DNA of 64,000 nucleotides from assembly GCF_902652985.1 (NCBI RefSeq), contig NC_047024.1, positions 17,856,001-17,920,000 on the forward strand, read 5' to 3'. The notes beneath the pieces were generated by a model. It had not been told where the DNA came from. It searched no databases and worked only from the letters and a program-made list of their open reading frames with translations. The DNA comes from Pecten maximus (Eukaryota). The position numbers and the translations under genes are program-made. Positions 1-47,830 of the stretch are shown here, piece after piece. The first letter of the stretch is position 1, and each line of letters starts with the position of its first letter.

Positions 1-1096
1 CACCTTTGGTGTTGGCATTATAACAGTCGTTGTTGTAGATGACATTGGTGAAATAAGTGGCGGGGCTGGGTGAATGTCACTTGTACCAGAATCGGCCTTC
101 CTCAGAGTTCCAAATAATCCCTCTAGGTCTCTGTTAATACCACCTGACCCATATCGACCTCGGACCTCGGCTTCGTAGCCCTGTAATAGACAAATTAGAA
201 ATTATTGATATTTGTCTTAACGATGCTTTAATTTTATCTAAATGATAGATAACAAATCATTTATTGTATACTAATCCATTTTATATGCCAGTTAAACTTT
301 TATGTGTTTTTGGCAGTGTTTGATACTTACAGAAAATAGATCTTCGCCCCTCTCCCGATAACAGATAGCCATGAGGAAGTCACAGATGTTGGAAAATTCG
401 CTCAGTTTGAGAAAATGTCCTTCTGTGTTTGTGGAAATCGTCTTGTAGAAGTCCTCAACATCTTGGTGTTCAAACACCTGGACACCATATATTTTCACAC
501 CCTGAAAAATAAAGATTGACATTGTTGATTATACAGGAACTAACTCAGTCCTCTTAAGAGATTCATATTGATATTATAAAAGTATAGTTATGTCTGATTA
601 ATACGGCTTATCGATCATTTATGGTTCCATTACTTACCATATTGTGAAGATCATTGACTTCTGCTCTCCAGTCAATGTTATCAACATTCAGTTCATATTC
701 AGGTTCATGGGGTTTGGCGTCTCCAATCATGACCAGGATTTTCTGTGATGTTGGTGTCCATGAGAAATTTTGTCGGACCATTCGGAGAATTAATTCATAA
801 CATTCGTCTTCATCTCCGCCACCAGTTCCTTCCACACCCTTCACGAAGTTACAAAGTTCTACAACGTTTGTACAGAGGTCAAGTTCCTTGGTCAAGTAGA
901 AGACTTTGTCGTCACAGTAATCGCCATGGGCTATGACACCAATTCTGATGCCGGGAATATCCGCCTGGAGGTGCTGAATCATGTCCTGTAGCCTTCCCTG
1001 TACCTCCTCAAGTATGGAGGACATGGATCCAGTAGTATCAAAGGAGAAGACGATTTCAAGGAGTCCTCCAGGGGGAAGGATGGGTGGTGCCGCCAT
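1..1096 (-). CDS. vWA (von Willebrand factor A) domain protein, 5' part; continues beyond the left edge of the window
   Basis: Coding exons 1096-638 (ATG; MIDAS motif FDTTGS, then AHGDYCD, GGGDEDECYE, MIGDAKPH), 501-331 and 180-<1, joined by phase-0 GT..AG introns with the frame preserved. The third exon reads GYEAEVRGRYGSGGINRDLEGLFGTLRK followed by a Pro/Thr-rich linker. An acceptor at 1108-1110 lies just upstream of the ATG. Confidence 0.9.
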
Positions 1097-5200: not shown

Positions 5201-8200
5201 AACGTAATAGGATCTACGATATCCACCTACACTCTGGTTACCTAAAGTCATAGGATCTACGATATCCACCTACACTCTGGTTACCTATGAAGTTATAGGA
5301 TCTACGATATCCACCTACACTCTGGTTACCTATAAAGTCATAGGATCTACGATATCCACCTACACTCTGGTTACCTAGAAAGTCATAGGATCTACGATAT
5401 CCACCTACACTCTGGTTACCTATAAAGTCATAGGATCTACGATATCCACCTACACTCTGGTTACATATAAAGTCATAGGATCTACGATATCCACCTACAC
5501 TCTGGTTACCTATAAAGTCACAGGATCTACGATATCCACCTACACTCTGGTTACCTATAAAGTCATAGGATCTACGATATCCACCTACACTCTGGTTACC
5601 TATAAAGTCATAGGATCTACGATATCCACCTACACTCTGGTTACATATAAAGTCATAGGATCTACGATATCCACCTACACTCTGGTTACATATAAAGTCA
5701 TAGGATCTACGATATCCACCTACACTCTGGTTACCTATAAAGTCATAAGATCTAAGATATCCACCTACACTCTGGTTACCTATAAAGTCATACGATCTAC
5801 GACATCCACCTACACTCTGGTTACCTATAAAGTCACAGGATCTGCGATATCCACCTACACTCTGGTTACCTATAAAGTCACAGGATCTACGATATCCACC
5901 TACACTCTGGTTACCTACAAAGTCATAGGATCTACGATATCCACCTACACTCTGGTTACCTAAAGTCATAGAATCTACGATATCCACCTACACTCTGGTT
6001 ACCTAAAGTCATAGGATCTACGATATCCACCTACACTTTGGTTACCTATAAAGTCATAGGATCTACGATATCCACCTACACTCTGGTTACCTACAAAGTC
6101 ATAGGATCTACGATATCCACCTACACTCTGGTTACCTAAAGTCATAGGATCTACGATATCCACCTACACTCTGGTTACCTATAACGTCATAGGATCTACG
6201 ATATCCACCTACACTCTGGTTACCTATAAAGTCAAAGGATCTACGATATCGACCTACACTCTGGTTACCTATGAAGTTATAGGATCTACGATATCCACCT
6301 ACACTCTGGTTACCTATAAAGTCATAGGATCTACGATATCCACCTACACTCTGGTTACCTAGAAAGTCATAGGATCTACGATATCCACCTACACTCTGGT
6401 TACCTATAAAGTCATAGGATCTACGATATCCACCTACACTCTGGTTACATATAAAGTCATAGGATCTACGATATCCACCTACACTCTGGTTACCTATAAA
6501 GTCACAGGATCTACGATATCCACCTACACTCTGGTTACCTATAAAGTCATAGGATCTACGATATCCACCTACACTCTGGTTACCTATAAAGTCATAGGAT
6601 CTACGATATCCACCTACACTCTGGTTACATATAAAGTCATAGGATCTACGATATCCACCTACACTCTGGTTACCTATAAAGTCATAGGATCTACGATATC
6701 CACCTACACTCTGGTTACCTATAAAGTCATAGGATCTACGATATCCACCTACACTCTGGTTACATATAAAGTCATAGGATCTACGATATCCACCTACACT
6801 CTGGTTACCTATAAAGTCATAGGATCTACGATATCCACCTACACTCTAGTTACCTATAATGTCATATAGAATCTACGATATCCACCTACACTCTGGTTAC
6901 CTATAAAGTCATAGGATCTACGATATCCACCTACACTCTGGTTACCTATAAAGTCACATGATCTACGATATCCACCTACACTCTGGTTACCTATAATGTC
7001 ATAGGATCTACGATATCCACCTACACTCTGGCTACCTATAATGTCATAGGATCTACGATATCCACCTACACTCTGGTTACATATAAAGTCATACGATCTA
7101 CGATATCCACCTACACTCTGGTTACCTATAATGTCATAGGATCTACGATATCCACCTACACTCTGGTTACCTATAAAGTCATAGGATCTACGATATCCAC
7201 CTACACTCTGGTTACCTATAAAGTCATACGATCTACGACATCCACCTACATTCTGGTTACCTTTAAAGTCATACGATCTACGACATCCACCTACACTCTG
7301 GTTACCTATAAAGTCACATGATCTGCGATATCCACCTACACTCTGGTTACCTATAAAGTCACAGGATCTACGATATCCACCTACACTCTAGTTACCTATA
7401 ATGTCATATAGAATCTACGATATCCACCTACACTCTGGTTACCTATAAAGTCATAGGATCTACGATATCCACCTACACTCTGGTTACGTATAAAGTCATA
7501 GGATCTACGATATCCACCTACACTCTGGTTACCTATAAAGTCATAGGATCTACGATATCCACCTACACTCTAGTTACCTATAATGTCATATAGAATCTAC
7601 GATATCCACCTACACTCTGGTTACCTATAAAGTCATAGGATCTACGATATCCACCTACACTCTGGTTACGTATAAAGTCATAGGATCTACGATATCCACC
7701 TACACTCCGGTTACCTATAAAGTCATAGGATCTACGATATCCACCTACACTCTGGTTACCTATAAAGTCACAGGATCTACGATATCCACCTACACTCTGG
7801 TTACCTATAATGTCATAGGATCTACGATATCCACCTACACTCTGGTTACCTATAAAGTCATAAGATCTAAGATATCCACCTACACTCTGGTTACCTATAA
7901 AGTCATACGATCTACGACATCCACCTACACTCTGGTTACCTATAAAGTCACAGGATCTGCGATATCCACCTACACTCTGGTTACCTATAAAGTCACAGGA
8001 TCTACGATATCCACCTACACTCTGGTTACCTACAAAGTCATAGGATCTACGATATCCACCTACACTCTGGTTACCTAAAGTCATAGAATCTACGATATCC
8101 ACCTACACTCTGGTTACCTAAAGACATAGGATCTACGATATCCACCTACACTTTGGTTACCTATAAAGTCATAGGATCTACGATATCCACCTACACTCTG

Positions 8201-22000: not shown

Positions 22001-25000
22001 CAGCATGTTGGTGTGGATGATGTTCGGCATGGTCGAGTCACGGTTGGATACATTCTCCAGGTACCCTCCAAGGATGGTCATTGCCTCTCCATCATCTCTG
22101 GCCGCTAGTAATTCATCCTTCTTGGCATCAAGTATAGTCAACGCCACTTGGAAGATCACCTGTAAAGGTACAGATATACTTGTATACTAATGTAGGTCAG
22201 AGATAGTTGTGGTGAATGGTGATAATCAACATCAATTTCATTGATTTGATTGATTTTGTTTGTTCTTGTTTAACGTCCTACTAACAGCCAGGGTCATTTA
22301 AGTATGTACAAGGTTTTGGAGATGGAGGAAAGCTGGAGTACCCAGAGAAAAACCACCGGCCTACGGTCAGTACCAGACAACTTCCCCACGTGGGTTTCGA
22401 ACTAGCGACCCAGAGGTGGAGGGCTAGTGATAAAGTGTCAGGACGCCTTAACCATTCGGCCACCGCGGCCCCACGTGGGTTTCAAACTCAAAGGTGGAGG
22501 GCTAATGATAAAGTGTTGGGACACCTTAACCACTCGGCCACCGCGGCCCCTTTGATTGATTTGAAATATTGGTTAGCTAATTAACTATATGTATTTAACC
22601 CATTGTTCAGTTCTGTAATGTGAACTTGGTAGGTATCTGCGTCACCAGCTTGATGTGATCAATTATTAAAAGGATTTTGTTGAAAGCCTCAAGGAAGTAG
22701 ATTTAAAGGTAAGATGTTCCTGGACAACACTTCATGAGTTGATGCCAGTCATATGACAATGTTTCAAATATCATCTAATAGCTACAGCAGATATTACCCA
22801 AGACTAAAAGGAATAAATAATGTAGTTGGCTGGGTATGGAACAGAGGTTCATATGGAGTGTTGGAGTAACAGGATATTATGCGAGAGATGACCCAAAAAG
22901 TATTAACTTATAATTATCGGGATTTGAATTTGTGAACAAAAACATGTGTCCCTTTCTCCTACACATAGTAAGCATTAAAAATTTTGCACTCAATTGACCT
23001 TTGACTTCAAAATGGTTTGCAGTGACACGATTATAGTACAATGCACAATACCTGTGGGTGATACATACTTATTCTAGAATAAGTTTTAAAGTTTTGTCAA
23101 GATATCTTTAAACTGTTCAAAGACAAGATTGTAATAGAAAAACAATGACAACAAGAAGAACCAATACTACAACAGCATGTCTTCCTTCTAATGATAAGGA
23201 GATACAATTAGAGATAAGAAAATCTATATTTGACAGATAGTTGAAACATAAGCTCAGCTTCAGCAGCTGAGAGAGATGAGAAATTAACTTACTCGAGCAC
23301 CGTCGTAAAAGAAACAATCCAGTATATTTACTGCACAGCTGAAAGGCATTACACTGAAACAAAGATGGACATCAAAGTTTTCAGTATCAGACGTCAAATT
23401 CTTACAGTTCGTTAATCAAGGATATCGTTGTTCGATTAAATCTTATTGAATTTTCTGGACTCGCAAGATAATTCAATAATCGTTTTTAATTATAAATTAT
23501 ATGACTGTAAATTATGGGTTATAAGACGAAAGGAGTAATACATTAATTTACATAATAATTATTAATTAATAATTCCCATATTTCTGAAGCTCAACTTTAA
23601 AATCGTCGTAATTCAAACAATTTCCAATATAATCTCAAGATTCTTTCAATTATGCGTTCTATACTGTGTACACTACATGTTCTGCCAGGGGGACGGGGCA
23701 TATAATTCACATTAAAGCCTGGGCAGTAAGGGTGGGGCCCGGGCGGAACTATTACAGCTCTGACCTATAACATTACCAGACATAAAATACCTGAGAAATA
23801 TGGTGAGAAACCAGGACAGGGAGATCATGCTGAGTAATCCAAGGGTCTCTAACTTCTGGTACAGGCTAGGTAGGTTGTCCTTGATCAGCTCCTCAAACAC
23901 ACCTGTTTAATATAAGTTATCCAATAGCAAATATCTAGATAAATCTGTTGTTCCAACCAGCACTAGTTGTATACTATATCACACGACTTTTTAATTTGAT
24001 CGGATGTTCAGCTTAATTAGCATCTTGATATTTAGGTAACTCTGTTATTCCCACTAGTAGTACTAGTAGTTGTACACTATCACAGGGCTTTTTAATTTGA
24101 TTCTGATGTTCAGCCTAATCTGTCCGGTTCTCTAAATTTTGACCCTTACAAATTAGTTTTAATAATAAAAAAAAAAAATCATTGATGTTAGAAAAACCAA
24201 TTAATCAGAAATTTCTGAAAGTGTACTGTGTTCATAAATCTTTGGCTTCATGTATTTTTGGGATGTTACGAAACCAATAAGTAGTTGATAATTTGGCATT
24301 AAGACAAGATACAAAATACCTGAATCATTAAGAAACAAAAACATATATATACTATATACATTTTTGACTAGTAAAAAACAAGGTTAAACAACTTCTAACT
24401 TGAATCATGTCCCTTTTGTCATGCCTATCTTATAGTGACCTATCTCCATGACTTACTTTGGTCTATAAGAGCCCCGACTACCTTGGTGTTATAGTAGTCG
24501 GGTAGTAGTCTCTCACACACAGCCGTCAGTAGCCAGAACGCCTCCTCCTCATCAGTATAGAGGAGCAACACACTCGTTACAATGTTCATTGCCTGGCAGT
24601 AGCCTACAACAGATGGAGATATATATGTTCTAATCACCGACTAGTATTTGAATAATTATATTTCATTCAATGATGATATTTCTAAAATTCTTTTATATAG
24701 AATGATTCATTCAATAATAATATTTTTAAAATTCTTTTATAAATATACAAAGGTTAAAAAAAAAATTGTATTATCTAATTTTAAAATTATTTATTGTTAA
24801 ATTAGTACTTGTTCAATAATGCATATTAGTGTCATAAAAATGCTGCACTGGTTTTTTTTTAATATTAAGCCTGAAAATTATCTCAATTAGTACATTAATT
24901 AATTAGTAATTAACACAATACTGTATCTACCAATTCAATAAACTCATTCATTTCTATTGTTGCTCAGTAGAATTTCAAACAAACAGTACTATATAATAAT

Positions 25001-34000: not shown

Positions 34001-37000
34001 TGGATACTAATTTCTTTTGGATATATATATACCAACAGATATTTTTTGTATCATGTCACTTACAATTGACTAGCTTCTCTTCCTTGGGCATGTTAAACAG
34101 CTTCATGAACTTCCTGGTCGCTGTTTTATATCTTTTAGTTTCATCATCTACAAAAAAAGACATTTTTTTCATAAAAATCATACTCAAACATTCTCTTCAA
34201 TCTCCAATCAATACAAGATACAAAGAATCTTGTAATCTAATACGAAAAGGAAATTCCTAAATTCAATCCCACTTTGATAAACTACCAAGTTATCAATAAT
34301 GTAGCATTTTGAGCATGCATAACCATTTAGTAAGAGATAAATTCACTTCTCCACACATCTATCAGACAGGATGGAATGTATCAATAAACAAGTACACTGA
34401 TCCCACAATTTACATCAATCATGTCAACAATCTCATTAAAACCTAATTAATTGTAAAAGGAGTGGGTCGGTGTGGCTTGTACATAGTGTTAAATACAGTT
34501 TCTGTCGGTCAGCTGACGGAGCATGCTTCTTTGGCTGAGGAGGTAGAGCCGTGGCTTATAATTATCATACCTGAGACCTGGGTTGGATTCCTGTTAGGGC
34601 ACTCGACAAGAAGGTGTTTTTCCCTGTGCTTTCACATACTATTTAATATAAACCCTTACATTTACGTGTAACTGTAATTTTGGAAATCTAAGAAAACTCC
34701 ATGACAACTCTCTTTACAATCTTTTCCCATGACTTGATTGGCTAGCAGACTTACCATCTTCTCTCTTTACTTGATTGGCTAGCAGACTTACCATCTTTTC
34801 CCTTCACTTGATTGGCTAGCAGACTTACCATCTTCTCTCTTTACTTGATTGGCTAGCAGACTTACCACCTTCTCTCTTCACTTGATTGGCTAGCAGACTT
34901 ACCATCTTCTCTCTTCACTTGATTGGCTAGCAGACTTACCATCTTCTCTCTTCACTTGATTGGCTAGCAGACTTACCATCTTCTCTCTTCACTTGATTGG
35001 CTAGCAGACTTACCATCTTTTCCCTTCACTTGATTGGCTAGCAGACTTACCATCTTCTCCCATGACTTAATTGGCTAGCAGACTTACCATCTTTTCCCTT
35101 GACTTGATTGGCTAGCAGACTTACCATCTTCTCTCTTTACTTGATTGGCTAGCAGACTTACCATCTTCTCTCTTCACTTGATTGGCTAGCAGACTTACCA
35201 TCTTCTCTCTTCACTTGATTGGCTAGCAGACTTACCATCTTCTCTCTTCACTTTATTGGCTAGCAGACTTACCATCTTTTCCCTTCACTTGATTGGCTAG
35301 CAGACTTACCATCTTCTCCCATGACTTAATTGGCTAGCAGACTTACCATCTTTTCCCTTGACTTGATTGGCTAGCAGACCTACCATCTTCTCCCATGACT
35401 TAATTGGCTAGCAGACTTACCATCTTTTCCCTTCACTTGATTGGCTAGCAGACTTTCCATCTTTTCCCTTGACTTGATTGGCTAGCAGACTTACCATCTT
35501 CTCCCATGACTTAATTGGCTAGCAGACTTACCATCTTTTCCCTTCACTTGATTGGCTAGCAGACTTACCATCTTCTCCCTTGACTTGATTGGCTAGTAGA
35601 CTTTCAATTTTACATCTGATGAATTCTGTTGCATCCTCATTCGCCTCAAATGCACCTAGAGAAAATGTAGAAGTTTTATCAAGTGTTTTTCATCATTTGC
35701 TCTTCATCACTTGAAGTGCGTTTGCTTTTTTTTTTTCGTTTTCATAGTCACAAATATTGATGACATCATCATGATATATTATGACATCACATCTTCAATC
35801 AATATTTCTTTGAAGTATAAAAATTCAAAATGTTATTTTGTAGATTCTTCGGGTAATGACTGTTTTTTTTTACACTAATAAAATAATAAACTAATTTAAA
35901 ACCACTTTCCTTTATTAAATTATCAAAGGTCATTGATCTCAAAAGATTTTCTTTTTAAGAATAAGTAGTAACATGTACCTGGTAATATGTTAAAAGACTT
36001 TGTTTTTAATAATTTACCAAACATAATCTTGTAACAAATTTTTTTGAAAACTGCCACAAATCATTTTCAAGAAATTATTAATTATTGCTTACTTATCTAC
36101 AGAGTATTTTGTGCAAATGATTACCTAGCTAGCTGTCATATAGTCATCAAATGCTTTCACAGGAAAAAGATTACAAATTATACTAATTTGTTTATAATTA
36201 CCCAGAGTTTCCATCAAATGTTGTTCTAGCCATTCCCAATCTTTATGAATTTCTTTTTTGTTATTGGCCACAGCCACAGCTGAAAGGTAACAAAAATAAG
36301 GTAGACAATGAAAGAGATTTCAAAACAATTATATATGCAAATGAATTTCAACTTTTCAGGATGACTTCTTGTGGTTATCAATTAATTTAAAGTGCTTTTA
36401 TCAGATAATGAGCATAAAAACAAAGCAATTAGAATCTTAAGTTTTTTTCAAATAATGACAATACATATATATTAAGTAAACCAGTCATGATAACTAGTGT
36501 TGTTCCAATAATCAATTTAATTGATGATTAGTCGTTTTACCTCTGACTATGACTAATCGATCATAATTTTTTATGATCAATGATGTTTTGACTTTAATAT
36601 AGAAATGTTCAAGATTTACAGCAGGCTTCAACAATCAATAAAAGAACAATATCACCGGTAAATTGAATTAAATATGCCTTAATTCAACATTTAAAAAAAT
36701 AGCTAAATGTCTAAAACATAGCCACATTTCTGCCTATTTTAGCTACTGTTTTTTGCAGATTTTTTCCCTTTCTGTTCATGATCGATCAATAATCGATCAT
36801 TGATCGATTAAGAAATGGTGATGATCGATCATGAAATTCATATTTATTCCCAACACTTATGATAACATACTGTAGCTGACGTCTGATCCATGGGGCTGGT
36901 GAAGTATTCTATATGGAGGTGTCTGAAAATATGTCAATTATCATCATTAGAAAGCAAGGAAATGTGAATTAAAGCGGATACAAAATGTATACAATTATAT

Positions 37001-38735
37001 TAGTATCTTAAATGAGTTTTTATTTCATTTAAGGTTTAAGTTAACAAGACATAGATTTTTTTTTTGTTTTTGTTTTTTTGCAAGCTTTGGAAAAGCTTTA
37101 ATTTGGTACCACCTTTTAATCTGAGAAAACTTATATTTTGACAGGTCTGATGTAAAAAAAGACGGCCATTTTGTAATGTCATTCACAATTGATGACATCA
37201 TGTCATTGTCCACATTATAACGTCAAAAATCAGTCTCAGACTTGTACAAGTGTACAGCAAATGAAAAACGCTCAGGATATAATTACACTAGCACTTGTGA
37301 CAAAAAGTATTACACGGGATAATTCATTTGATAGCAGGCCAATTATGTGATAAATGTACAATATGTACATTATATTCATAAGAATGTCATAGAAGATATG
37401 ATAATACACCTTCATACATACAATATGTAATGCTTAAACTAGCTATCTTTAAATTTCCCAGCTTAAATATTTCCTGTAATCTGCCATTTTTGATGTGACA
37501 GTCAGTTTACCTTGCCAATCAGCAAACCTGTGTCAATCAAGACTTATACTGCTGTGTACGTGTATTTACATGGTGAATTAACTCTTTTGTTTAGTGGTAT
37601 ATTATCCAGACTAGTGATAAAATTTGTCAATAATTTTCAATAGTCCTTTTAAAAGCCTCAGCCTATAGGACACCATGCTGGTTTTAAATACTAGCTAGAC
37701 TATAGCTAACTTTGTATTGAAGAACTAATAAAGAGAAATTATCTCTAACCAAGTCAGTTAAAGAAGCAGTTAGCAACTTAGCATTTCTTATACCAGGGTT
37801 ACATATATAAATTAGAGAAAAAATATGTAACTGGTTGGATAGAACCTCAGGCTCAACAACAGTGCAAGTGGCTGTCCACAGCGATGAAAACTTGAATCTT
37901 CCAAAATATCTTAGCTTGTACGTAGCATATATTCACTCAGAAAATCAATACCAACAATCTCAATATGATAAAAACCAGCAGCCAGCTTGTAGCTGCAGGC
38001 ACCAAGAAAAATGTTTGCAGTTTTATTATTTTATCCATGTTCATTTAATTATACACAATATACCTTGCTATCTAGGACAGTGTCCAGAGTACCAACAAGG
38101 AGACCGGTCAACCCTCCTCCTCCGTACCCCTTCCTTCGCTGGAGGATGAAGAAAGGGTTGGCTCTTTCAGTCACCCTGAAATGTAAATATCAAAATGAAA
38201 ACAAGTCTGATTCTATTTTTAGCATTTTTTACCCGGACCTTAAGCTTGAGGCCAGAATACTTTGAAGTATGAACTTGTAAGATTGTATCGAATTTCAATT
38301 GGAGAGGCTAAGATGGTAGATATCTACAAGTAGTGTATATCTGTCTTATGTATATACACGTCAGGCCAAGCCTTACAGATCTCGATAACTGATAGGGTCA
38401 CTGGCCTTGTAAACTGTTTATCTTTCGATTTATCAGTTTGGCCAGACCATAACTTTTTAGTTTTACCAACTGAATACAATATAGATCAAATTGGTTATGT
38501 AATTTAAATAAAAGCAGTTTCATTTATATGAGAATATACATAAATGTTTTATTATTAAAATACGTATCGCGAATACACAGTAATATTGAGGAAATGTAAG
38601 AGGTTCTTCCGAGAGCAAAAGGGACAAGGCTGGGACGACAGGGGGTGTGATACTTTGGAAATGTATGTCATTCGTTTTCAAAAATACAAACCAGAGAGCA
38701 TTTGCCAGCAGGATTTCTTCTGGCTTAAGCCACAT
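13074..38735 (-). CDS. TBC1D9: TBC1 domain family member 9/9B-like Rab-GAP (2 GRAM domains, TBC domain, EF-hand), about 1290 aa, 30 coding exons
   Basis: Exons: 38735-38692, 38175-38064, 36922-36871, 36279-36202, 35655-35569, 34147-34064, 32465-32332, 31368-31303, 31069-30993, 30691-30638, 30227-30155, 29228-29096, 28585-28466, 27956-27865, 27504-27316, 26678-26570, 26183-26089, 25203-25109, 24603-24457, 23902-23791, 23353-23293, 22159-21977, 19602-19492, 19171-19073, 18792-18601, 18053-17873, 17509-17447, 15731-15378, 14971-14868, 13658-13074. Diagnostic peptides: [58 protein letters not shown] (GRAM), [14 protein letters not shown] and GYCQAMN (TBC R- and Q-fingers), [14 protein letters not shown] (EF-hand), [19 protein letters not shown]. 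All junctions are GT-AG and phase-compatible except exon 10/11 (see findings). Confidence 0.96.
16116..16506 (+). mobile_element. TRIM-like non-autonomous LTR retroelement with tRNA-derived sequence in its LTRs
   Basis: LTR1 16116-16274 (TGTAAC...TTTCA) and LTR2 16381-16506 (TGTAAC...TCACA, internally deleted) are diverged direct repeats. The PBS TGGCGCCCCATGTAGGGA at 16276 matches the tRNA-Lys(CTT) 3' complement TGGCGCCCAACGTGGGGC at 14/18. A purine-rich GGATTGGGAGCA precedes LTR2. Internal region is about 106 bp. Confidence 0.75.
16600..17428. mobile_element. Degenerate non-autonomous repeat, HINE/Helentron-like, with an internal CATG-rich insert
   Basis: Repeated ACTATGACTG...ACAAAGTTATG modules, a GGAC/AGAC microsatellite and a terminal short palindrome near 17390-17425. 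The family assignment is inference. Confidence 0.4.
17636..17801. repeat. Tandem repeat of about 52-59 bp, 3 copies
   Basis: ACTGATATCAAACATTTTTAGGGCTGTTCCAAAACTACCAGTGTGGGAGGGG occurs three times, about 70 nt from the exon-26 donor. Confidence 0.85.
18343..18550 (-). mobile_element. tRNA-derived SINE (family A, V-domain-like core)
   Basis: Minus-strand head GGGGCCACGGTGCCGAGTGGTTAAGG (A box), B-box-like GTTTCGAG, core TTTTCTCCGGGTACT...TTTCCTCC, tail CCTGGCTGTTAATAGGACGTTAAAC. Flanks TTACAGACAGC / TTACAGAGAGC resemble a TSD. A second copy is at 22257-22550. Confidence 0.85.
19820..19905. mobile_element. Terminal fragment of a Tc1/mariner/pogo-like MITE
   Basis: Ends GGTCTTTATAGACAGGTTTAACTG-TA, similar to the terminus at 21935-21957; contains internal ACCTGTCTATA repeats. 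Confidence 0.55.
20001..20212 (-). mobile_element. tRNA-derived SINE (family B)
   Basis: Minus-strand head GGGTGGTTGGGTGGCACAGTGGTAA (A box) and GGTTTGATTCC (B box), V-like core GGGTTTTCTCCTGGTTTTCCGGTTTCTTCCCAC, A-rich tail. Confidence 0.75.
20316..21957. mobile_element. Outer Tc1/mariner/pogo-like non-autonomous element (TA TSD), interrupted by a second element
   Basis: TA-CAGTAAAACCTGCTCTAACGGCCACC ... GGTGGCCGCTTTATACAGGTTTGACTG-TA terminal inverted repeats. Confidence 0.75.
20625..21807. mobile_element. Inner Tc1/mariner/pogo-like non-autonomous element, about 1.18 kb
   Basis: TA-CAGTGGAACCTCTATAAACCGAAC ... GTTCGGTTTTCGGAAGTTGCACTG-TA, with subterminal GTTCGGT repeats. No transposase ORF. 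Confidence 0.8.
22257..22550 (-). mobile_element. tRNA-derived SINE (family A) with duplicated 5' head
   Basis: Same family as 18343-18550. The head GGGGCCGCGGTGGCCGARTGGTTAAGG is present twice (starting at 22472 and 22550). TTTGATTGATTT on both flanks is a possible TSD. Confidence 0.88.
25318..25540. mobile_element. Degenerate HINE/Helentron-like fragment
   Basis: Short palindrome TTAGTCCC...GGAGACTAA followed by a GTCC/GTCT microsatellite. The family assignment is inference. Confidence 0.35.
26806..27003. mobile_element. Short HINE/Helentron-like element
   Basis: Starts GAGACATAAATGCCCCC, contains GGGAC/GGGAT repeats and ends with the hairpin TATGCCCCC...GGGGGCATA. Confidence 0.4.
27110..27295. 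repeat. 21-bp tandem repeat next to the exon-15 donor
   Basis: AATTATGGCAATCGACAAGTT, about 5 good copies plus degenerate ones. Confidence 0.85.
27448..27716 (-). repeat. Triplicated intron/exon junction (3' splice site plus start of TBC1D9 exon 15)
   Basis: Three copies of about 84-94 bp. CAG acceptors give exon starts at 27504, 27588 and 27682. Confidence 0.9.
28800..29125 (-). repeat. Tandem repeat of about 51 bp made of the TBC1D9 exon-12 end plus donor, interrupted by a poly(A)-tailed insert
   Basis: Unit (minus strand) CAGAACTACATCTGCTTTGCCAGTAGG|GTAGGTATACTCGCATGA..., about 4 copies. The insert spans 28929-29020. Confidence 0.88.
28929..29020 (-). mobile_element. Short 5'-truncated retroposed fragment
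   Basis: On the minus strand, AATAAA (28962-28957) is followed 13 nt later by A15. Flanks GAAAAG / GACAAG may be a TSD. Confidence 0.55.
32496..32768. mobile_element. hAT-like MITE
   Basis: Termini CAGGGCTC...GAGCCCTG. Flanks GTCATTTA / TCATTATC resemble a degraded 8-bp TSD. Confidence 0.55.
33443..33612. repeat. 42-bp tandem repeat, 4 copies
   Basis: ACATTATTTACCAATATGTAAATAACCCATGATATATAACTT x4. Confidence 0.9.
34452..34636 (+). mobile_element. Possible solo LTR containing a tRNA-like segment
   Basis: TGTAA...TCACA ends, with internal A-box-like TGGCTGAGGAGG and B-box-like GGTTGGATTCC. Flanks are TAAT / TACT. Confidence 0.4.
34719..35603 (-). repeat. 37-bp minisatellite (about 24 copies) built from the last 35 nt of TBC1D9 exon 5 plus GT
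   Basis: Unit (minus strand) AAGTCTGCTAGCCAATCAAGTGAAGAGAGAAGATG|GT. The first copy is the coding exon end ([12 protein letters not shown]). Confidence 0.96.
36495..36858. mobile_element. hAT-like MITE with a perfect 8-bp TSD
   Basis: TSD ATGATAAC at 36487-36494 and 36859-36866. Termini TAGTGTTG...CAACACTT, with ATCGAT-rich subterminal motifs. Confidence 0.8.
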
Positions 38736-41700
38736 AATGGCAGATTAGAGATAACCAAACATTCTTGACAGTAAGCAACGTGTCGGTTTTGTATTAATAG
38801 ACATGAACATGCACTCGTCAGCTGACTGCCATTACTGGCGTTAGGATTGTCTCGGTAGCGTTTATCGTTTTTAATAGATAGCTTCAGAGGTATTCCGAAA
38901 TATAATGTTTACGTTTTCTCGTGATCTCGTCCGACTGTGATCATTGTAACATTTTAGGTTATATGACACGTGGGAAATGATACTTTAATGACGCAGCGGT
39001 ATTAGTCATAAAATAAAACGATACTTGTCAACAGATCACATGTTTTATTCAAATATTTAAATTGCAAGAAAAAACAAATAATGCGCGGGAAAATTTGATT
39101 TCATATGACTAGGTAGACTAAAATAGTCTTGTCTGCGTTGTAAAGGTCGCATCTTCCAATGAACTAATTTAGTAATTATATGCCCCGGTACAGTTTTAAT
39201 TGTTGCATTGCAAGGAAAAAAAAGAAAGAAAGAAAAAACGCTCTAAAATACCAATCGGAAAACAATCTAGATTTCTATTCCTCTCAACATCAAGTGAAAT
39301 ATTGTGCATGTACACAAGTTTCTCAGAAAGCATTTGACTTTTCATGAGACAACATGCATGGTGGACGAAATTAGCAATCGGAGTAGATAATGTCGTTTTG
39401 GAAGAATTTATTTAGAACCTAGTTTAAAATTTCTTTTATTTCACTTTAAAGTTGTTACAACAATGAACAGTTAAGAGAAATGGAAACAGGAACACGTGTC
39501 ACAGCAGCTTATCTAACTTGACCTATCACCGGTAAAAATGGAATGTCTGACGGAAACTTGATTAATTAGGCCTTGGACACTCAACATTTAAAAGGGCCCG
39601 GGAAACATATCCCTGGCGTACTCCATGGAACAGTCTATTCACAAATCGCTAAAAGGGTAAAAAACATATAATGATAATGATGATAATAAAACAAGGAAAC
39701 CTGGTACATCTTAATGGACATATTAAATTATTGACATTCTTAATTCATTTGTCACTTTTTCATGGGTATTCAAAAACATTTTCTAGCAGAGCTTTTCTGG
39801 ATCGTTGAGCAAAAAAACCTTCACTTTTTCGCCACAATATTCGTTTGGTGTCTTGGTGATAAAATGAAATGCATTATTTGGTACTTGTAGTAATCATTTT
39901 ATCCAAGGACAACCACTAAAACATGATCCTAAGCGATGCTGTTGTCACAGAATATAATTTATTGCGACCTTGCATTTTGACCAAATCATGAAATCCTCCT
40001 CGGTTACTAGAACGTAATTAATGATTATATATATAATACACGTTTTAAAAGCTAATTATTACAAAACTTGCATTTAAACGTAAATGTGGCCGGTTCCTTT
40101 CTAGAAGGGAGCTTGGGGTTTAAAATATTTGAGGAGCCTCGATGCAGGGATATTTTTGAATGTGTGTATTGCAATTTCATTCTCATCAAGTGAACAATTC
40201 AATTTTGTTTTACTGCCTGAAATACTTTGGGATATTATCTCCCTTAGCACAATTCAGTTCGAAATCGCAGAAAAAAATGCAATTTTCAAGCTTTGATATG
40301 TTTAACACAATATATTAATTCTTTAAGGTAAATAAGAATCCTAAAAGAAGTTGTTCATGTTTTTATTTTCCCTCGATAATACAGACAATGCATGCATTGT
40401 TGTTACCCACGATAATAACTACAAAAAAATCATGTGAAAATCTGGACATTGATTTGATGTCAGCTAATTGTATTTTATACGTGGAGTCAATTAATCTCAG
40501 CTGATTCCTACTTTAGAAGAGATGCTCGCTTTTATATTTAAATATCCATCAATATCGCGCGTGCTTGCCATTAGTCTGGTGAGCGCTGACTGGCAGCGAT
40601 ATCGACCTTGGTCTTCATACCCGAGTACGGGAGTGTCAGTCTGGAAGATTTTTGTTCATAAGTATTGAGACTGATCCGAGGACCAGTTCATGCCGGTAAG
40701 TTAAACACATATAAAAGTCTTATAACTAAGTATTTTAATTTCTAACCTATAATCTCATACCTATTAATGTTAAGTTTTGTTTTGGTTTGTTTGTTGTTGT
40801 TTTTTTTCTCTCTCTCAAATTTGTACTTGTAGTCTATTTGATAGACATTGAATTTAAGATGTATAATCGGAAAGGCAGCGCCTTGAACATTTGTGATCTG
40901 GAAAGCAAAAGATATCTTTTAAACCAGTTATTGTCAAATATTGGATAAGTTTAACATAACAAATCGGCAACATTTCATGTTCTGAATGAAAAGTGACATT
41001 GTTGAATATTTTAGAACGAATTCTGAATGAAATGAAAAAATAACATATTTCTCCATAGTTTATATATGACAATGTCTCCCATTATCATTATGCCTGTCAA
41101 ATACCGACAGAATTCCTTCAAGCATTCTTAAAACTTGTTTCTTGTGTTGTAACTGCTATTTTATTGCATTTCACATTAACTGTGGAATTTAGTTTTGTAT
41201 AGTTGAATATTACCAATATGTTGTTTCATTTTTTTAATATTTTATCATTTTCTGATTTTTTTTCTTTGAAAAAAAATTACAACAACCTAATATCTCATTC
41301 CTGCGAAATGGTGGTTGAAATTCCACATGTTTCTTTTACCGTTTAATTTGGTGTAGTATAGTGCGATGTAGCGTAGGAACGTCATTCAGAACGGGATATT
41401 TCTTCTTTATCGTCCTTTTCATTCCTATGTCCATGGATTGTTTTCTTAAACGTCTGTTTCTGTACCCTGACGGGCACAATGTAATGCTTTTGAAATCTAA
41501 TATGTATCATGCTGTTAAGTTTTGAAGGTTAATACCAGTGATGAGTGAATTGTCAACACGATTTTTCAGGATGAGTGACATAGTGTGTCACTATTTGAAA
41601 TATATTCTCTTGCTTAACAAATGTATCCATGTATTATATCATATGTCCTGTACAATTCTGTATGTATGCCGTTCTCTAAACTTTATATGTTTATGAGAAT

Positions 41701-42176
41701 AAAATATTGTCATTGTCATTGTCATGAGATGACGTTTCAAAGTTAGACATCATCCATAGACACGGTCTTTATGTCACATTTGCTACAGACTGGATAATGA
41801 ATGAAAACATACCGAACAAGCCATAAGCTCTTCATTTTTAGATTTCTTGTGTATATTATTACATTAAAATGTCATATTTTCCAATATGGTTTAATTATAC
41901 CCTAGTGTAGTAATTAATCCCTCTGGCTTTGGATCAGAAGGTCGTGAGTTCAATACTACTGACGACAGTGACAGTTGATTTTTTACAGAGAGGTAACCAT
42001 TTATCCTTCAAGAATGACGAAAAAGTGCCATCAATAAGCTTTAACAAAGCTTTCAAAGACACCAAGACTGTGATTGTATGATTCTGTACAACAAAGACTG
42101 TGCCGAATGCCTTGATGGCTTCACATTTCATTTGCCAACATTGACGTTTTTCTTTTTCAGGTTGAAATTTGTGACG

Positions 42177-45100
42177 ATGCCGACCATTGTTCAGATGTTT
42201 GCGCATGAAGATGGGAATTTGGCGGGCGGGTACAGTACTCAAAATTTCATGGAGGTGAGGAATAACATCCGCCTTGTTATGCTATGTGTGGATATCTGTC
42301 TAAGGAACGTTGCCTGTATGAGTATTTTCTACAATACCTTGTCGAAGGCCTGTAGACTTCATGACAATGTCTTCTACAACCCCGACTCGTTTGTCTTGGA
42401 ACCAGGATGGCACTATTACAGAACCGTAGGAGGTAAGAACTGTACCGATGGTGAGGACCAAACGTTTAGAAATTCAAAGATGTTCTGATCAATTCGGTAA
42501 TTCGGGACATTGGATAAATAACAATAAAGAGAATACTAGTAATGTATAGTACTATATAGTAATATATTGTATTGTAATGTATTGTAATATATAATAGTTT
42601 ACAGTAGTGTACAGCAATGTATAGTAATATAAAGTACTTTATAGTAATGTATTAAAGTAATGTAAACTAGTGTATAAAAATGTATAGTAATTTAGCATTA
42701 TAGATAATAATGTTAAGTAATTCATAGTAGTGTATAGTAATGCATATTAATGCAGAGTAGTGTATATAATATGTTGTAATATATAATAGTGTATAGCAAT
42801 GTATAGCAGATATATAGTATACATTAATATACAATATATAAAATCGCTTTATGATATTCTTGCCACTTTCCTGCACTTCAACATGTTTCTTCTTTCACGT
42901 TCCTGATTTCCATATGCGTTTTATTGCATTCTATTTACATCTGTGTCTTTAATTGTTGACACGTTAAGTTGTGGAGTAGAGGGCTTCTATAATTTGTAAT
43001 CTCTTGTGCCCAATGCTTTTACTAGATTTTAAGAAGCATTAAAATATGCTCAAATTAAATTAGTAAAAGTAAACTCAATACTATTAAAGTAACATCAGTG
43101 AAATAATCTCTGACAAGGTTTTTTGTTATCTCGTCAGGTCTTTAACAATTAAATCTTAATTTAAAAAACAAACAAACAAACAAACAACAAACAAGCAAAC
43201 AAGCAAACAAACAAAAAACAAAAAACAATAGTGGTCTAAAAAAAATAGGTGATTGTCCATTGTTGATTTCCAGCAGTGGCTAAACTACATTCACCTTCTC
43301 GTTGTGACAGAGACAAATATATATCCACGTGACGTCATCCTGTCAGAATCAATCGATAGTAATATACAGGATATGATGGGAATAGATATGTTGTGATGAT
43401 GCTGTTCACTCTTTGGTGTATCTCCAAATATAATTACACGCATGACTGAACACAGGGAGAAAATTTAATTACAACGCTTTCAACCAAAACATATCAATAT
43501 GTTTTACACCTTTGATATATTGAATAACTTGTTCTACCTCGATTTAACGGTTCCTGATAATGGTTGGCCTTGATGTTTTGCAGTCAAATCATACCATACA
43601 CATGTACATGACACATTTAATCAACAAAGACGAACCAGTTGACACGTGAGATAAGTATCTGCTTATGGTATGTTCTATAGAGAAGAGAGAACATAGACGT
43701 GGTAGTCAATAATTTTAAAATAAATAGGTCTAGTTTTATCTACAATCAAAAACATTCTCCTATTTTGAAATGAGTTGCATATGACAATCTAAAATAAACT
43801 TCTCTTAGGAAAAAATTAAATAGCAAACCAATATCATTTCAGGAACAATAAAAGGACTCTATAAACATTATTGCCTACATCAGCGAAAACATTGTAAATG
43901 GGAAGTCGACGTCATATCTGGCTACTAACATTCAACGATGACTCGTTGTCGCTGATTTTTTATGACAATCTCTTTTTGATACTGATAGAGAAATTATAGC
44001 ACAGAAGGTAATATTATATACATATATGCGTTTTATGGATATATATTTCTTACTTTATCACAGTGATACACCAAAGCATCAAAATAATGCCAACGTTTTA
44101 AAAATCTGAATTATTGCTAAAAGACACTGGCTGTTAATAGGACGTTAAAAAAAAAACCTAACCCCCCCCCCCCCCCCCAAAAAAAACCACAAAAAAAACC
44201 ACAAAACTTATTCTGTTCAGAAATGAGACAAACAATGATACCTGGTAACCTGGAATTGTATTTTGTAAATAGATAAGATATAGATAAGTAGATGAAGTCC
44301 ACAAAAATTCTCGCTCTTAAACTAAGAACCGTGTTAGTGATAGCGAAATTTCCGCAATGAGATCCTGATGAAAATGCCTTTGTGTTTATACTTATCTTGA
44401 GACCATGTGCTATCTATTTGAGAAGCAAATATTGGAAAGAAACCTTTGGATATCGATCGAAATTTGTTACACTGAATATCATATGTTTCGGAAACATGTC
44501 ACGCTTTATTTGTGACAAGAAGACGGTGTCCCTGTTAGCTGGATTCGAACTAATGATCACTGTCGTAACGAATAACATGATGAGCCACGTTATCATACAT
44601 CTATACTACATGCTGAATTGAAGGCATCTTATATTTCTATGTCGTAAACGAACAATAATTTGTCTTTCCTACGTTTACTAATACCTACGATTGAGGAAAA
44701 TGCTTTTGGCGTCACTGACAGCGTTTACACACGTTGATCAGAATGTTTCTTTTTTTGTTTTTTTTTGGGGTTCTTTTTTGTGTGTTTTCGATTAAAATAC
44801 ATGTATGATGGAAACTATTTCGATTTTAAGTTTATGAAGTATATTTCTTTTCAGTAACCATTTTACATACGTACACTAAAAACCTCGATTTTTAGTTCCG
44901 AAAACTACCCAGAGTTAACATTTGCTAGTGAAGGACTCGGGAAGATGAAACCCAGTAACTTTGATCAGTCTCTTTTGTTTCCCAATTCACATGCAGATCC
45001 TAAATGTGATGTCTACCATGGATTCGTTCATCAACGAGACGCAGGATTTTGTTATCGGGCAGAATCTGACCTCCTCACCTCCTCACATGCAGAAAACGCA

Positions 45101-47666
45101 TGCGCAGCGAAAAGTTCCGCTTTAGCCATTCTGGACAATGCACAGAAACAAAATGTGGTGGTCGGAACCCTTAACTTTCTATCAAGTAAGCAAATACTGT
45201 TGATTCGATAATGACAATCCACGCTAAGAAATATCAGCGATTCTCATGAAAATATACCTTCGGTTTTCGTTAGGGTCAATGGCGTCTGTTGCTGCATGGC
45301 TTTAGATTGTGATGTTTGCATCTGTCCCATATCCTTAGAAACCTTAGACAAATGATTAATCTCTAAAACGGGATATATTTCATATCAAATACAAATCAAG
45401 CCATTAAGAATGGTAAGTTGGCCTGGTATCGGTAATGTGTACCTAGTGGGAAATCGAATACTAATACTATTAGTACTTTGGAAACCTTTACCAACTGAAA
45501 TATGAGAGGACCAATATACTGCTACAGACTGATCGTAATAATAACCGCTCAAATACTTTGTTTATAAGTAGTAATCAAATATGCCAAGATAAAATGCTCA
45601 GAAAAGATGTTAGCGATATGACTTTCGACAAAATGTATGAATGTTTAAAAAAAAAAGGATAAATAAATAAATGAATAAATATATAAATAGAACTATTTTA
45701 AGAGCAGTTTAAATGATGAAAAAAAATTAAATCGGAATTCCCACCAAAGAAACAATATAAAGGAATTATATTTACATATGGACCATGCATTTTTACTATC
45801 ATTAATATTATATTGTTTTTCTCTACGTTAACTCGATTTTATTGTGTTTTCCTAGCCAAAGATCCTGCCCCGGCCCAGATATCAACTGTGGAACCAGTTT
45901 TACAAGGATGCTACATGATTTCTGAGGTTGACAACCTTAGCACACAGTTTACCGGTGATCTGGCGCTGACAGTGCAGAAGTGTTTCGATGTATGTCAACC
46001 ATTGGGTAGAACGCATACCATGCTTGAGGTACGTTTGATAATAATGCAAATGAAGTACTGTACATATATATATCAATATAAAATGACGTATCTATTTCGG
46101 GATATTGAAATCTTGTCCCATTACTGAATTCAAATAGATTAGCAATTATTGGCACAGCCACAGAACTTGCCACAGAAAACAATTAACAGAAACTGCAATT
46201 AGCGAAAAAAATATAGTGGTAGTGGAATGTTTTTAGCGCGAAAAACGCTAGGATAAGACAACCACTAAAATGCGTACGTTTACAGTAAAACATAGAAATT
46301 TGCACTGCAGTGTCGTTATATATAAATCTATTATAGTTGTAAGTTCCGTTTCGGGTTATAGGAATTCGAACTGAAATGAGTACAGTAAGAATACGGACGC
46401 GATAAGAATGTAAACAATTAATGCTAGTCACACTTGACTCTCGTTTGGACGAAAGTTATAGAAAACATCATTGCTTTATTTTTTCGTGTGGATTACCATA
46501 TTGTATCACTTCCGATTAGAAGAATCGATTTGGTAGTAAGAACGTACACGTTTTCAAGGGTTTCCTTTGATCATTAATTTTGAGTATATGCTAAAAACAG
46601 TGAAAATGATAGAGAAGTTACCAATAAAAATAGAAACTTTACATAATGCAATTTTTGTTTGTAAATTGTTTCCACAGAATGATTTGTATCTTTTTCTCTC
46701 TTTTTTTTACGTTGCTTAGATACAGACAAAATGTCACTGTGGTGATCTCAAGGCTAATGCAGCAAAAATTGCCGACGCAGGTTGTAATAAGATATGTTCT
46801 GACGGAAAGTTTTGCGGGAACTTATCCGGGATGTATGCAACATACGAGCATGTTACCACCTCTACAGCCGGTAAGATCCACAAAGATACACCACACATAA
46901 ATGTACACAGTTCTTAAAATGTTAAACTACTGAAGTGAACGATAGATTTTGTATATAATTGCATTACTCCAATTGAAATAAAAACCGAAACGAAGTCATT
47001 GTATATCCTATTTAACCAAATAAACATTAACGAAGGCATACTTAATATGTTATGTTAAATTTATCTACGTTCCAATATATATATATCAAGGAAAAGTATA
47101 GAGTCTTTCTTTAAAAGAACAAATTGCCGGCTAAGTATATTCTCTATATTCTCATATAAGCAAGTACGGTGAAAAAAGACGCGCGTGATATATATTTTGA
47201 GTAGTTGTTCTCTCAAAATAAATATTGAATACATTTAAAGTTTAATCTATGACATTGGGAATTGAATCCTAGTCTACTGATAAACAATATGTAGACAAAT
47301 CCAAACGTTTCAGACGAGTCCCATATTTTACCACTGTATCTCTCAATTTTTATTCAAATGTGCTTATATCTTCTGTGACATTTGTAAAATCCTTTGGATG
47401 GTTTCAGTTGACACCAGTTTGAATATTGTTGTCTGTTTGTTATAGGTCCTAGTTTCGTTGGGTTTTACATAGGAGCAACATTAAACGCAACTGCTGTCCA
47501 ATGGATCTGGAGGGATACAACACTAGTTGTGTACAATGCGTTCGATACATCAGACGACTCCCCGCTATCAGAAACCTGTGCTGTGATGTCATCAGATGTT
47601 GCGTACAAGTGGTATTCAGAAGCGTGTACCTACACTGCTGGATATGTCTGTGAAGTTGATCTCTAA
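42177..47666 (+). CDS. PAN/Apple domain plus C-type lectin-like domain with an inserted WSC domain, about 329 aa
   Basis: Exons 42177(ATG; acceptor at 42160)-42432 (PAN-like CVDICLRNVACMSIFYN...CRL), 44997-45185 (CTLD N-half: C..GF..GFCY...AENAC....LAILD), 45856-46028 and 46720-46870 (WSC: GCY...LTVQKCFDVC...LE / KCHCG...CNKICSDGKFCG), 47446-47666 (CTLD C-half: FYIG...WIWRD...CAVM...W...C...YVCE, TAA). All GT-AG and phase-compatible, 990 nt in total. The true N-terminus is uncertain; a probable upstream exon ends at 40695. Confidence 0.85.
42535..42835. repeat. Degenerate low-complexity repeat of about 10 bp
   Basis: GTATAGTAAT-like units. Confidence 0.6.
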
Positions 47667-47830
47667 GATGTTATGACGAATATAGCATCAAATGTCATGT
47701 TTTGTGCCGGCGATATGATACTTTGTTTCTTATCCTGGACAGGGTAATCCCCAATTTTACCAGTGTGAGATTTTCTTTTCTTTTACCATGGACAGGGTTA
47801 TCCGCAGTTTTACCAGGGTGAGATTTTCTT

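What the first reader, a model, noticed from the sequence alone, without database searches (positions are those of the whole stretch)
44997..47666. A complete WSC domain is inserted inside a C-type lectin domain on a skippable phase-1/phase-1 exon pair
Seen: exon 44997-45185 encodes the N-half of a C-type lectin-like fold (GFCY, AENAC, LAILD, helix 2), and exon 47446-47666 encodes the C-half (FYIG, WIWRD, CAVM, W..C..YVCE). Between them, exons 45856-46028 and 46720-46870 (324 nt, 108 aa) encode an 8-Cys WSC-type domain with T/P-rich linkers. The module starts and ends in phase 1, so splicing 45185 directly to 47446 restores an uninterrupted in-frame lectin domain. The C-half lacks the EPN/QPD and WND motifs (DSP and WYS instead). 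Established: WSC domains are putative carbohydrate/glucan-binding modules, and CTLD sugar binding uses EPN/QPD plus WND. Inference: exon shuffling placed a second glycan-binding module into the helix-2/beta-2 loop of a lectin that lost its canonical site, possibly switchable by alternative splicing. Domain scanners would probably miss or split this CTLD.
Basis: partly seen in the sequence, partly recalled or inferred. Interest (0 to 1): 0.82.

Follow-up and report, generated by a model that had tools for sequence, protein, structure and literature searches.

The report
WSC domain nested inside scallop lectin domain
A king-scallop gene really does carry a complete WSC sugar-binding-type module on two exons in the middle of a C-type lectin-like domain; this unusual nested architecture arose by exon shuffling, is shared with another scallop, and is missing from the gene model of a third.

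Summary
Four exons (44997-45185, 45856-46028, 46720-46870, 47446-47666, + strand) have consensus AG/GT sites and the stated phases (1 | 1-0 | 0-1 | 1).

- **One lectin domain in two halves.** The outer exons encode the N- and C-halves of one C-type lectin-like domain (CTLD). The inner two encode an 8-Cys WSC domain.
- **Species.** The genome is Pecten maximus, by exact assembly size.
- **Nested orthologue.** RefSeq XP_021353004.1 (Mizuhopecten yessoensis, 328 aa) has PAN, CTLD-N, WSC and CTLD-C with the same junctions. Pfam finds WSC above threshold but only the C-half of the CTLD.
- **Orthologue without the insert.** XP_060069621.1 (Ylistrum balloti, 221 aa) joins the halves at the same point and scores as one Lectin_C domain.
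- **Fold.** An AlphaFold2 model of the nested orthologue packs the two halves into a CTLD: pLDDT 86-96 and 76-93, Z 18.7, 1.7 Å to codakine.
- **Mechanism.** Other P. maximus CTLD genes have a phase-1 intron at the insertion point. Other WSC genes have the same two-exon cassette. This supports DNA-level exon shuffling.

No signal peptide was found. Glycan binding is inferred.

The parts
42161..42432 (+). PAN/apple-like exon. The conserved Met is at 42177 and the exon ends in phase 1. It has 4 Cys.
   Evidence: Sequence with acceptor and donor. Pfam PAN_1 gives 19.7 bits on the open frame. It is 76-79% identical to the PAN part of P0001 and P0031, whose PAN_1 scores pass the cut-off.
44997..45185 (+). 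CTLD N-half exon: beta0/beta1 hairpin, helix 1 and helix 2. It carries Cys C0, C0' and C1 and is phase 1 at both ends.
   Evidence: It is 69-79% identical to residues 87-148 of the orthologues. It aligns with the N-half of uninterrupted CTLDs of the same genome.
45856..46028 (+). WSC exon a: a P/T-rich linker plus the first half of the WSC domain (3 Cys). It starts in phase 1 and ends in phase 0.
   Evidence: Pfam WSC positions 2-40 of 82, E 0.031. It is 56% identical to M. yessoensis residues 150-205. Its exon boundary is the same as in two-exon WSC paralogues.
46720..46870 (+). WSC exon b: the second half of the WSC domain (5 Cys) plus a T-rich linker. It starts in phase 0 and ends in phase 1. 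A second in-frame acceptor lies at 46726.
   Evidence: Its only PDB hit is yeast Wsc1 7pz2, residues 67-108. It is 66% identical to M. yessoensis residues 204-253. Pfam WSC on the orthologue gives 33.3 bits over positions 2-81 of 82.
47446..47666 (+). CTLD C-half exon: beta2 (FYIG) through beta5, with Cys C2, C3 and C4. It starts in phase 1. The TAA stop is at 47664-47666.
   Evidence: Pfam Lectin_C positions 42-106 of 107, 31.8 bits. PDB hits fall on the C-halves of many CTLDs. It is 76% identical to P0001 residues 151-221.

Best explanation
This is a five-exon scallop gene (Pecten maximus, chromosome-scale scaffold C10). Its product is PAN, then CTLD N-half, then a whole WSC domain, then CTLD C-half.

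**Origin.** The WSC domain arrived as a two-exon, phase 1-1 cassette with an internal phase-0 intron. It was copied at the DNA level from a WSC gene into a phase-1 intron that already split the CTLD just before the WIG strand. Phase compatibility kept the reading frame.

**Structure.** Flexible P/T-rich linkers let the 8-Cys WSC fold on its own as an excursion from the helix-2/beta-2 loop. The two CTLD halves still pack together, tied by the C1-C4 disulfide.

**Age.** The cassette is present and conserved in Pecten and Mizuhopecten, which sit on the two sides of the Pectininae versus Chlamydinae + Palliolinae split. So it is old and kept under coding constraint. The Ylistrum model without it is then a secondary loss or a skipped form.

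**Function (inferred, not shown).** The CTLD has lost the EPN/WND calcium-sugar site. The most likely role is a multi-module extracellular binding protein for recognition or adhesion, in which the WSC and PAN modules do the binding and the CTLD serves as a scaffold.

The confidence given applies to the anatomy and origin. The functional part alone would rate about 0.4.
For: - **Gene anatomy and phases:**
- **Nested orthologue:** XP_021353004.1 has identical junctions. Pfam gives WSC 33.3 bits (cut-off 27.8), Lectin_C only over 257-325, and PAN_1 24.2 bits.
- **Second annotation:** an independent GenBank model of the same species (OWF50763.1) also splices CTLD-N to both WSC exons.
- **WSC-less orthologue:** XP_060069621.1 joins the halves at the same codon and scores Lectin_C 45.6 bits over profile 8-106.
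- **Fold:** the AF2 model of the nested orthologue has pLDDT 86-96 for residues 100-150 and 76-93 for 258-328. Foldseek gives TM 0.75-0.84 normalised to whole CTLDs. VIA-align gives Z 18.7, rmsd 1.7 Å, 123 of 129 residues to codakine over model 88..328.
- **Pre-existing intron:** many P. maximus CTLD C-half exons start at profile positions 37-41. About 13 of 17 have a phase-1 acceptor a few residues before WIG.
- **Cassette:** two-exon WSC modules on scaffold C2 have the same phase-0 intron (YAGTQ|YRTQCYCG against HTMLE|IQTKCHCG) and phase-1 flanks.
- **Conservation:** the WSC is 56-66% identical between the species, with all 8 Cys kept. The intron read-through after it is not conserved.
- **Cys parity:** 3+3 Cys in the CTLD halves and 8 in the WSC.
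- **Species and phylogeny:** (PMC7191990; PMC11354973).
Against: - No transcript evidence for P. maximus.
- No P. maximus protein for this gene appeared in the protein searches, so inclusion of the cassette here rests on conservation and on models from another species.
- No signal peptide was found. All three orthologue models (P0001, P0031, P0032), from two other scallop species, start at the Met that corresponds to window 42177. That is odd for a protein with 18 Cys and three N-glycosylation sequons.
- The AF2 model used an alignment I built with the CTLD rows gapped across the insert, so it is not independent of that alignment.
- The WSC and PAN parts of the model are low-confidence (pLDDT 25-45) because there were no aligned homologues.
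- No close donor WSC remains in the genome.
Confidence: 0.8

Rival explanations
1. The WSC pair is an alternatively spliced in-frame cassette. One gene makes both a plain PAN-CTLD protein (221 aa) and a PAN-CTLD[WSC] protein (329 aa), perhaps by tissue or after challenge. This extends the best explanation and does not contradict it.
For: Skipping keeps the frame and gives an even Cys count. The Y. balloti RefSeq model is exactly the skipped form, joined at the same codon.
Against: Each species has only one annotated form, with no isoform labels. All six splice sites around the cassette have strong consensus and pyrimidine tracts, as expected for constitutive exons. No reads were available.
Confidence: 0.25
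2. The WSC exons are present in the DNA but no longer used in P. maximus. They would be a decaying cassette or pseudo-exons, and the real product would be the plain PAN-CTLD protein, as annotated in Ylistrum.
For: No P. maximus protein or transcript was seen here. The Ylistrum model lacks the cassette.
Against: Both exons are open. They keep all 8 Cys, both linkers and consensus splice sites, and are 56-66% identical to the Mizuhopecten exons. The sequence just past the donor is not conserved. That is the pattern of coding constraint, not decay.
Confidence: 0.07
3. The flanking exons are not one domain. On this view the N-half exon is an unrelated piece, and the gene is simply PAN - X - WSC - partial CTLD.
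For: The N-half exon alone has no Pfam hit. Pfam reports only the C-half of the CTLD in the nested protein.
Against: The joined orthologue gains 14 bits and extends the Lectin_C match to profile position 8. The only PDB hits of the N-half are CTLD N-halves. It carries the C0/C0'/C1 Cys pattern and aligns with uninterrupted paralogues. The AF2 model superposes on whole CTLDs at 1.7-2.4 Å.
Confidence: 0.03

Closest known systems
XP_021353004.1, uncharacterized protein LOC110450080 of Mizuhopecten yessoensis (P0032); also OWF50763.1 / UniProt A0A210QPV4, 'WSC domain-containing protein' (P0031)
   Same: It is the orthologue. It has the same order PAN, CTLD-N, WSC, CTLD-C and the same exon junctions, and is 56-79% identical exon by exon.
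   Different: It comes from another genus. Databases call it uncharacterized or only a WSC protein, and Pfam sees just the C-half of its CTLD. The GenBank version runs into the intron after the WSC and lacks the CTLD C-half.
XP_060069621.1, 'C-type lectin domain family 4 member E-like' of Ylistrum balloti (P0001)
   Same: It is the orthologue of the PAN and CTLD parts, 69-79% identical. The halves are joined at exactly the codon where the cassette sits in Pecten.
   Different: It has no WSC. Its CTLD is uninterrupted and is recognised as one Lectin_C domain. I could not check whether the WSC exons are gone from its genome or only skipped.
Tandem WSC + CTLD proteins: polycystin-1 (WSC and a C-type lectin domain in its ectodomain, from my own knowledge) and P0018 (WSC followed by three CTLDs)
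   Same: They use the same two module types in one extracellular protein.
   Different: Their modules lie side by side. Here the WSC lies inside the CTLD.
Classical nested domains, from my own knowledge: the integrin alpha I (VWA) domain inside the beta-propeller, and the PH domain split by a PDZ in syntrophin
   Same: One autonomous domain is inserted in a surface loop of another, which still folds.
   Different: The domains are different. Here the exon cassette and the recipient intron can still be traced in paralogues of the same genome.
Two-exon WSC cassettes of P. maximus on scaffold C2 (52.03-52.11 Mb and 19.757 Mb; L037, L040-L044, L046)
   Same: They have the same exon structure: phase-1 flanks and a phase-0 intron four residues before the CxCG motif.
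   Different: Their sequences are only distantly similar. No close donor copy remains. None of them lies near a listed Lectin_C match.

Membership tests
C-type lectin-like domain (Pfam PF00059, CTLD fold) | Lectin_C profile match above the curated cut-off | tested here: met
   The C-half exon alone gives 31.8 bits against a cut-off of 22.6, over profile 42-106. The uninterrupted orthologue gives 45.6 bits over profile 8-106. The joined window model was not sent to any search tool.
C-type lectin-like domain (Pfam PF00059, CTLD fold) | Long-form Cys pattern C0-C0', C1-C4, C2-C3 and a WIG-type beta2 strand | tested here: met
   The N-half has KC..FCY..NAC. The C-half has FYIG..TCAVM..EAC..YVCE. 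Both align with paralogues. The disulfide pairing itself is inferred from the family.
C-type lectin-like domain (Pfam PF00059, CTLD fold) | The two halves adopt the CTLD fold together | tested here: met
   This was tested on the nested orthologue P0032 (72-79% identical in the halves), not on the window protein. AF2 pLDDT is 86-96 and 76-93. VIA-align gives Z 18.7, rmsd 1.7 Å, 123 of 129 residues to 2vuz_A. Foldseek TM is up to 0.84.
Calcium-dependent carbohydrate-recognition domain (true C-type lectin) | EPN or QPD motif plus the WND motif of Ca site 2 | tested here: not met
   The aligned positions read D-D-S and W-Y-S, whereas many paralogues keep EPN/QPD and WND. So it is a CTLD but not a canonical CRD.
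WSC domain (Pfam PF01822) | WSC profile match above the curated cut-off | tested here: inconclusive
   The window exons were searched apart. Exon a gives 14.9 bits (E 0.031, profile 2-40) and exon b gives no Pfam hit. The orthologue with both exons joined by its own annotation gives 33.3 bits against a cut-off of 27.8, over profile 2-81.
WSC domain (Pfam PF01822) | Eight conserved cysteines | tested here: met
   There are 3 + 5 Cys, all conserved with M. yessoensis.
WSC domain (Pfam PF01822) | PAN/apple-like WSC fold | tested here: inconclusive
   The AF2 model has pLDDT 24-35 over residues 151-257, because no WSC homologues could be aligned in place.
PAN/apple domain (Pfam PF00024) | PAN_1 profile match above the curated cut-off | tested here: inconclusive
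   The window open frame gives 19.7 bits against a cut-off of 21.4. The orthologues give 21.8-24.7 bits.
Exon-shuffled symmetrical module (phase 1-1 class, Patthy's rule) | Module bounded by same-phase introns and inserted in an intron of that phase | tested here: met
   The cassette is phase 1-1. The recipient position carries a phase-1 intron in about 13 of 17 paralogous CTLD genes. WSC paralogues have the same 1|0|1 cassette.
Alternatively spliced cassette exon | Both inclusion and skipping junctions seen in RNA of one species | not testable with these tools

The most novel reading that the evidence does not exclude
The WSC pair is a regulated in-frame cassette. By including or skipping two exons, the scallop would toggle a whole folded binding domain in and out of the helix-2/beta-2 loop of an intact CTLD. 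That would be a natural domain-insertion switch, and the Ylistrum form would represent the 'off' state.
Probability: 0.22. Interest if true: 0.72.

Novelty: new variant of a known kind. Interest (0 to 1): 0.52.

Why it matters
**A clean, traceable case.** Domain insertions inside another domain are uncommon in animal extracellular proteins, and their origin can rarely be traced. Here all of the pieces are visible:
- the recipient intron, still present in sister CTLD genes
- the donor-type cassette, still present in WSC genes
- the phase rule that kept the frame
- an orthologue with the insert and one without

That makes it a clean case for studying how exon shuffling can build nested architectures, and how a CTLD tolerates a 108-residue insert.

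**An annotation blind spot.** Profile scanners report only half of the CTLD, so such proteins are filed as 'WSC protein' or 'uncharacterized'.

**A candidate receptor.** For bivalve immunity research it adds a candidate recognition protein with three binding-type modules and a CTLD that has lost its calcium-sugar site.

Tried and rejected
- **Orthologue DNA.** That ruled out checking for WSC exons in the Ylistrum intron and any dN/dS estimate.
- **Word-index searches.**
  - The C-half exon found nothing in the permitted length range.
  - A profile of CTLDs gave only 9 hits, too few for a deep alignment.
- **First AF2 run.** Folding the WSC-less orthologue with a 7-row alignment failed (pLDDT 34.5) and says nothing about the fold.
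- **WSC rows in the folding alignment.** WSC fragments from the genome were pulled onto the CTLD C-half by MAFFT. I left them out, so the WSC part of the model is uninformative.
- **Own-genome searches.** The four exons found no paralogue of the whole gene and no close WSC donor.
- **Signal-peptide exon.** A scan of 30-42.1 kb gave only two weak candidates (40522-40634 and 40767-40822). Neither has support.
- **Literature.** Searches for WSC with C-type lectin, scallop or nested domain found nothing relevant.
- **Joined window model.** In the sandbox I used it only to count length, stops and cysteines.
Full report
**What is in the sequence.**

Each has a pyrimidine-rich AG acceptor and a GTAAG/GTACG donor.

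- Exon 44997-45185 enters and leaves in phase 1.
- Exon 45856-46028 enters in phase 1 and leaves in phase 0.
- Exon 46720-46870 enters in phase 0 and leaves in phase 1.
- Exon 47446-47666 enters in phase 1 and ends with TAA.
- An upstream exon, 42161-42432, encodes a 4-Cys PAN-like module and also ends in phase 1.

Counting only length, stops and cysteines in the sandbox:

- With the middle pair, the frame from Met 42177 is open for 329 aa and has 18 Cys.
- Without the pair, it is open for 221 aa and has 10 Cys.
- Cys per part: PAN 4, CTLD-N 3, WSC 8, CTLD-C 3.

Exons were searched one by one by reference.

**Exon-by-exon family evidence.**

| Exon | Result |
|---|---|
| CTLD-C (47446-47666) | Pfam Lectin_C positions 42-106 of 107, 31.8 bits, above the cut-off; aligns to the C-halves of many solved CTLDs |
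| CTLD-N (44997-45185) | No Pfam hit; only PDB hits at E ≤ 10 are residues 9-52 of rhodocetin delta, a C-type lectin-like protein |
| WSC a (45856-46028) | Pfam WSC positions 2-40 of 82, E 0.031 |
| WSC b (46720-46870) | Only PDB hit is residues 67-108 of the yeast Wsc1 domain, 7pz2 |

Taken alone, these half-domain hits are weak. The orthologues make them solid.

**Species.**

The assembly behind the window has 918,306,378 bases in 3,983 contigs. These are exactly the figures of the Pecten maximus assembly (PMC7191990).

**Orthologues.**

A full-library phmmer search with the last exon gave one close hit, P0001 (76% identity). It is XP_060069621.1 of Ylistrum balloti, 221 aa.

- P0001 is PAN plus an uninterrupted CTLD.
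- Its two halves are joined at exactly the codon where the cassette sits in the window.
- Pfam then matches Lectin_C over profile 8-106 at 45.6 bits, 14 bits more than the C-half alone. So the joined halves do score as one CTLD.

A word search with P0001 found P0031 (OWF50763.1, Mizuhopecten yessoensis). Its 90% cluster also holds P0032 (XP_021353004.1, 328 aa).

- Pfam on P0032 gives WSC 33.3 bits (cut-off 27.8, profile 2-81), PAN_1 24.2 bits, and Lectin_C only over residues 257-325 (profile 37-106).
- P0031, from a different annotation pipeline, also splices CTLD-N to both WSC exons. It then reads into the next intron and lacks the C-half. That would leave an unpaired Cys, so it is probably an incomplete model.

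Window-to-orthologue identity:

| Part | Identity |
|---|---|
| PAN | 76-79% |
| CTLD-N | 69-79% |
| WSC exon a | 56% |
| WSC exon b | 66% |
| CTLD-C | 76% |

All eight WSC cysteines are kept. The read-through peptides past the WSC donor are unrelated in the two species. That is the signature of coding constraint ending at the splice site.

**Fold.**

A first AF2 run on P0001 with 7 rows failed (pLDDT 34.5).

For the nested P0032 I built a 40-row alignment. It used single-exon and half-domain CTLD pieces taken by reference from the P. maximus genome. In that alignment, uninterrupted CTLDs run straight across the insertion point.

- The model has pLDDT 86-96 over residues 100-150 and 76-93 over 258-328.
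- PAN and WSC are low-confidence because no homologues were aligned there.
- Foldseek matches whole CTLDs with TM 0.75-0.84 normalised to the target. The alignments span about 230-245 columns, that is, across the insert.
- VIA-align gives Z 18.7, rmsd 1.7 Å, 123 of 129 residues to the bivalve lectin codakine (2vuz_A) over model range 88..328. Dozens more CTLDs score Z 14-18.

One caveat applies. The alignment already encoded the split, so the model shows compatibility rather than independent proof.

**How it arose.**

A Lectin_C scan of the whole genome shows many C-half exons starting at profile positions 37-41. Inspection of their upstream sequence finds a phase-1 acceptor a few residues before the WIG strand in about 13 of 17. 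A phase-1 intron at the insertion point is therefore a common feature of scallop CTLD genes.

A WSC scan and inspection show two-exon WSC modules on scaffold C2.

- They have a phase-0 intron at the same place as in the window: YAGTQ|YRTQCYCG against HTMLE|IQTKCHCG.
- They have phase-1 introns on both flanks.

The inserted module thus has the exon structure of a resident WSC cassette and fits the recipient intron's phase. This is the expected footprint of DNA-level exon shuffling. No close donor survives, so the event is old.

On published phylogeny, Ylistrum is basal within Pectininae (with Pecten), and Mizuhopecten lies in Chlamydinae in the sister clade (PMC11354973). Presence in both Pecten and Mizuhopecten therefore places the cassette in their common ancestor. 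The Ylistrum model without it is then a secondary loss or a skipped isoform.

**Binding site.**

In the alignment with paralogues that keep EPN/QPD and WND, the window and both orthologues read D-D-S and W-Y-S. The canonical calcium-sugar site is gone.

From the known CTLD topology (my own knowledge), the helix-2/beta-2 connection lies in the lower lobe, away from the long-loop binding face. An insert there should be tolerated. I did not measure this on the model.

**What remains open.**

- **Transcripts.** No RNA evidence could be obtained for P. maximus. No P. maximus protein for this gene appeared in the searches.
- **The splicing switch.** It is untested. Each other species has a single annotated form, and the cassette's splice sites look strong. 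I put a switch at about one in four.
- **Signal peptide.** None was found. All orthologue models begin at the Met matching window 42177, although the protein has 18 Cys and three N-x-S/T sequons. The first exon, if there is one, must lie between about 38.8 and 42.1 kb, because a TBC1D9-like gene starts divergently at about 38.7 kb on the other strand.
- **Function.** It is inferred from family knowledge only.

**Comparison and novelty.**

WSC and CTLD occur side by side in other proteins. Examples are P0018 (WSC plus three CTLDs) and polycystin-1 (my own knowledge). PAN occurs with CTLDs, as in P0019.

I found no description of a WSC, or any other domain, nested inside a CTLD. The protein itself is already in RefSeq for M. 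yessoensis, as 'uncharacterized'.

I rate this a new variant of a known kind. It is real, tidy and mechanistically traceable, and of moderate interest.

Noticed in passing
window 23775-24607 and 36125-38735, minus strand: A TBC1D9-like gene lies on the minus strand. RabGAP-TBC exons are at 24452-24607 and 23775-23903. N-terminal exons include an ORF at 38520-38735 that starts [15 protein letters not shown]. The gene is head-to-head with the lectin gene, about 3.4 kb from the PAN exon, so the lectin gene is not nested in it.
   Followed up: partly
window 46714-46726: Two in-frame AG acceptors lie 6 nt apart at the start of WSC exon b (46720 and 46726). The two M. yessoensis models differ by exactly this 'IQ' dipeptide.
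   Followed up: partly
window 57223-58016: A minisatellite reads as a long repetitive ORF (TNINLYTNVYLY...) on the minus strand.
   Followed up: no
window 2001-8000: GC skew is strongly negative (-0.31 to -0.35) over 6 kb, unlike the rest of the window.
   Followed up: no
G000:C2:52027894-52116089 and C2:19755656-19759505 (L037, L040-L044, L046): A cluster of two-exon WSC cassettes has phase-1 flanks and an internal phase-0 intron. One copy (L042) carries an in-frame stop.
   Followed up: partly
window 47667-48600: There is no AATAAA or ATTAAA within about 930 nt after the stop codon. The 3' end of the gene is not defined.
   Followed up: no
window 40522-40634 and 40767-40822: Two weak candidates for a signal-peptide first exon end in the phase needed to join 42161. 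The second lies in a T-rich, low-complexity stretch. Neither has support.
   Followed up: partly
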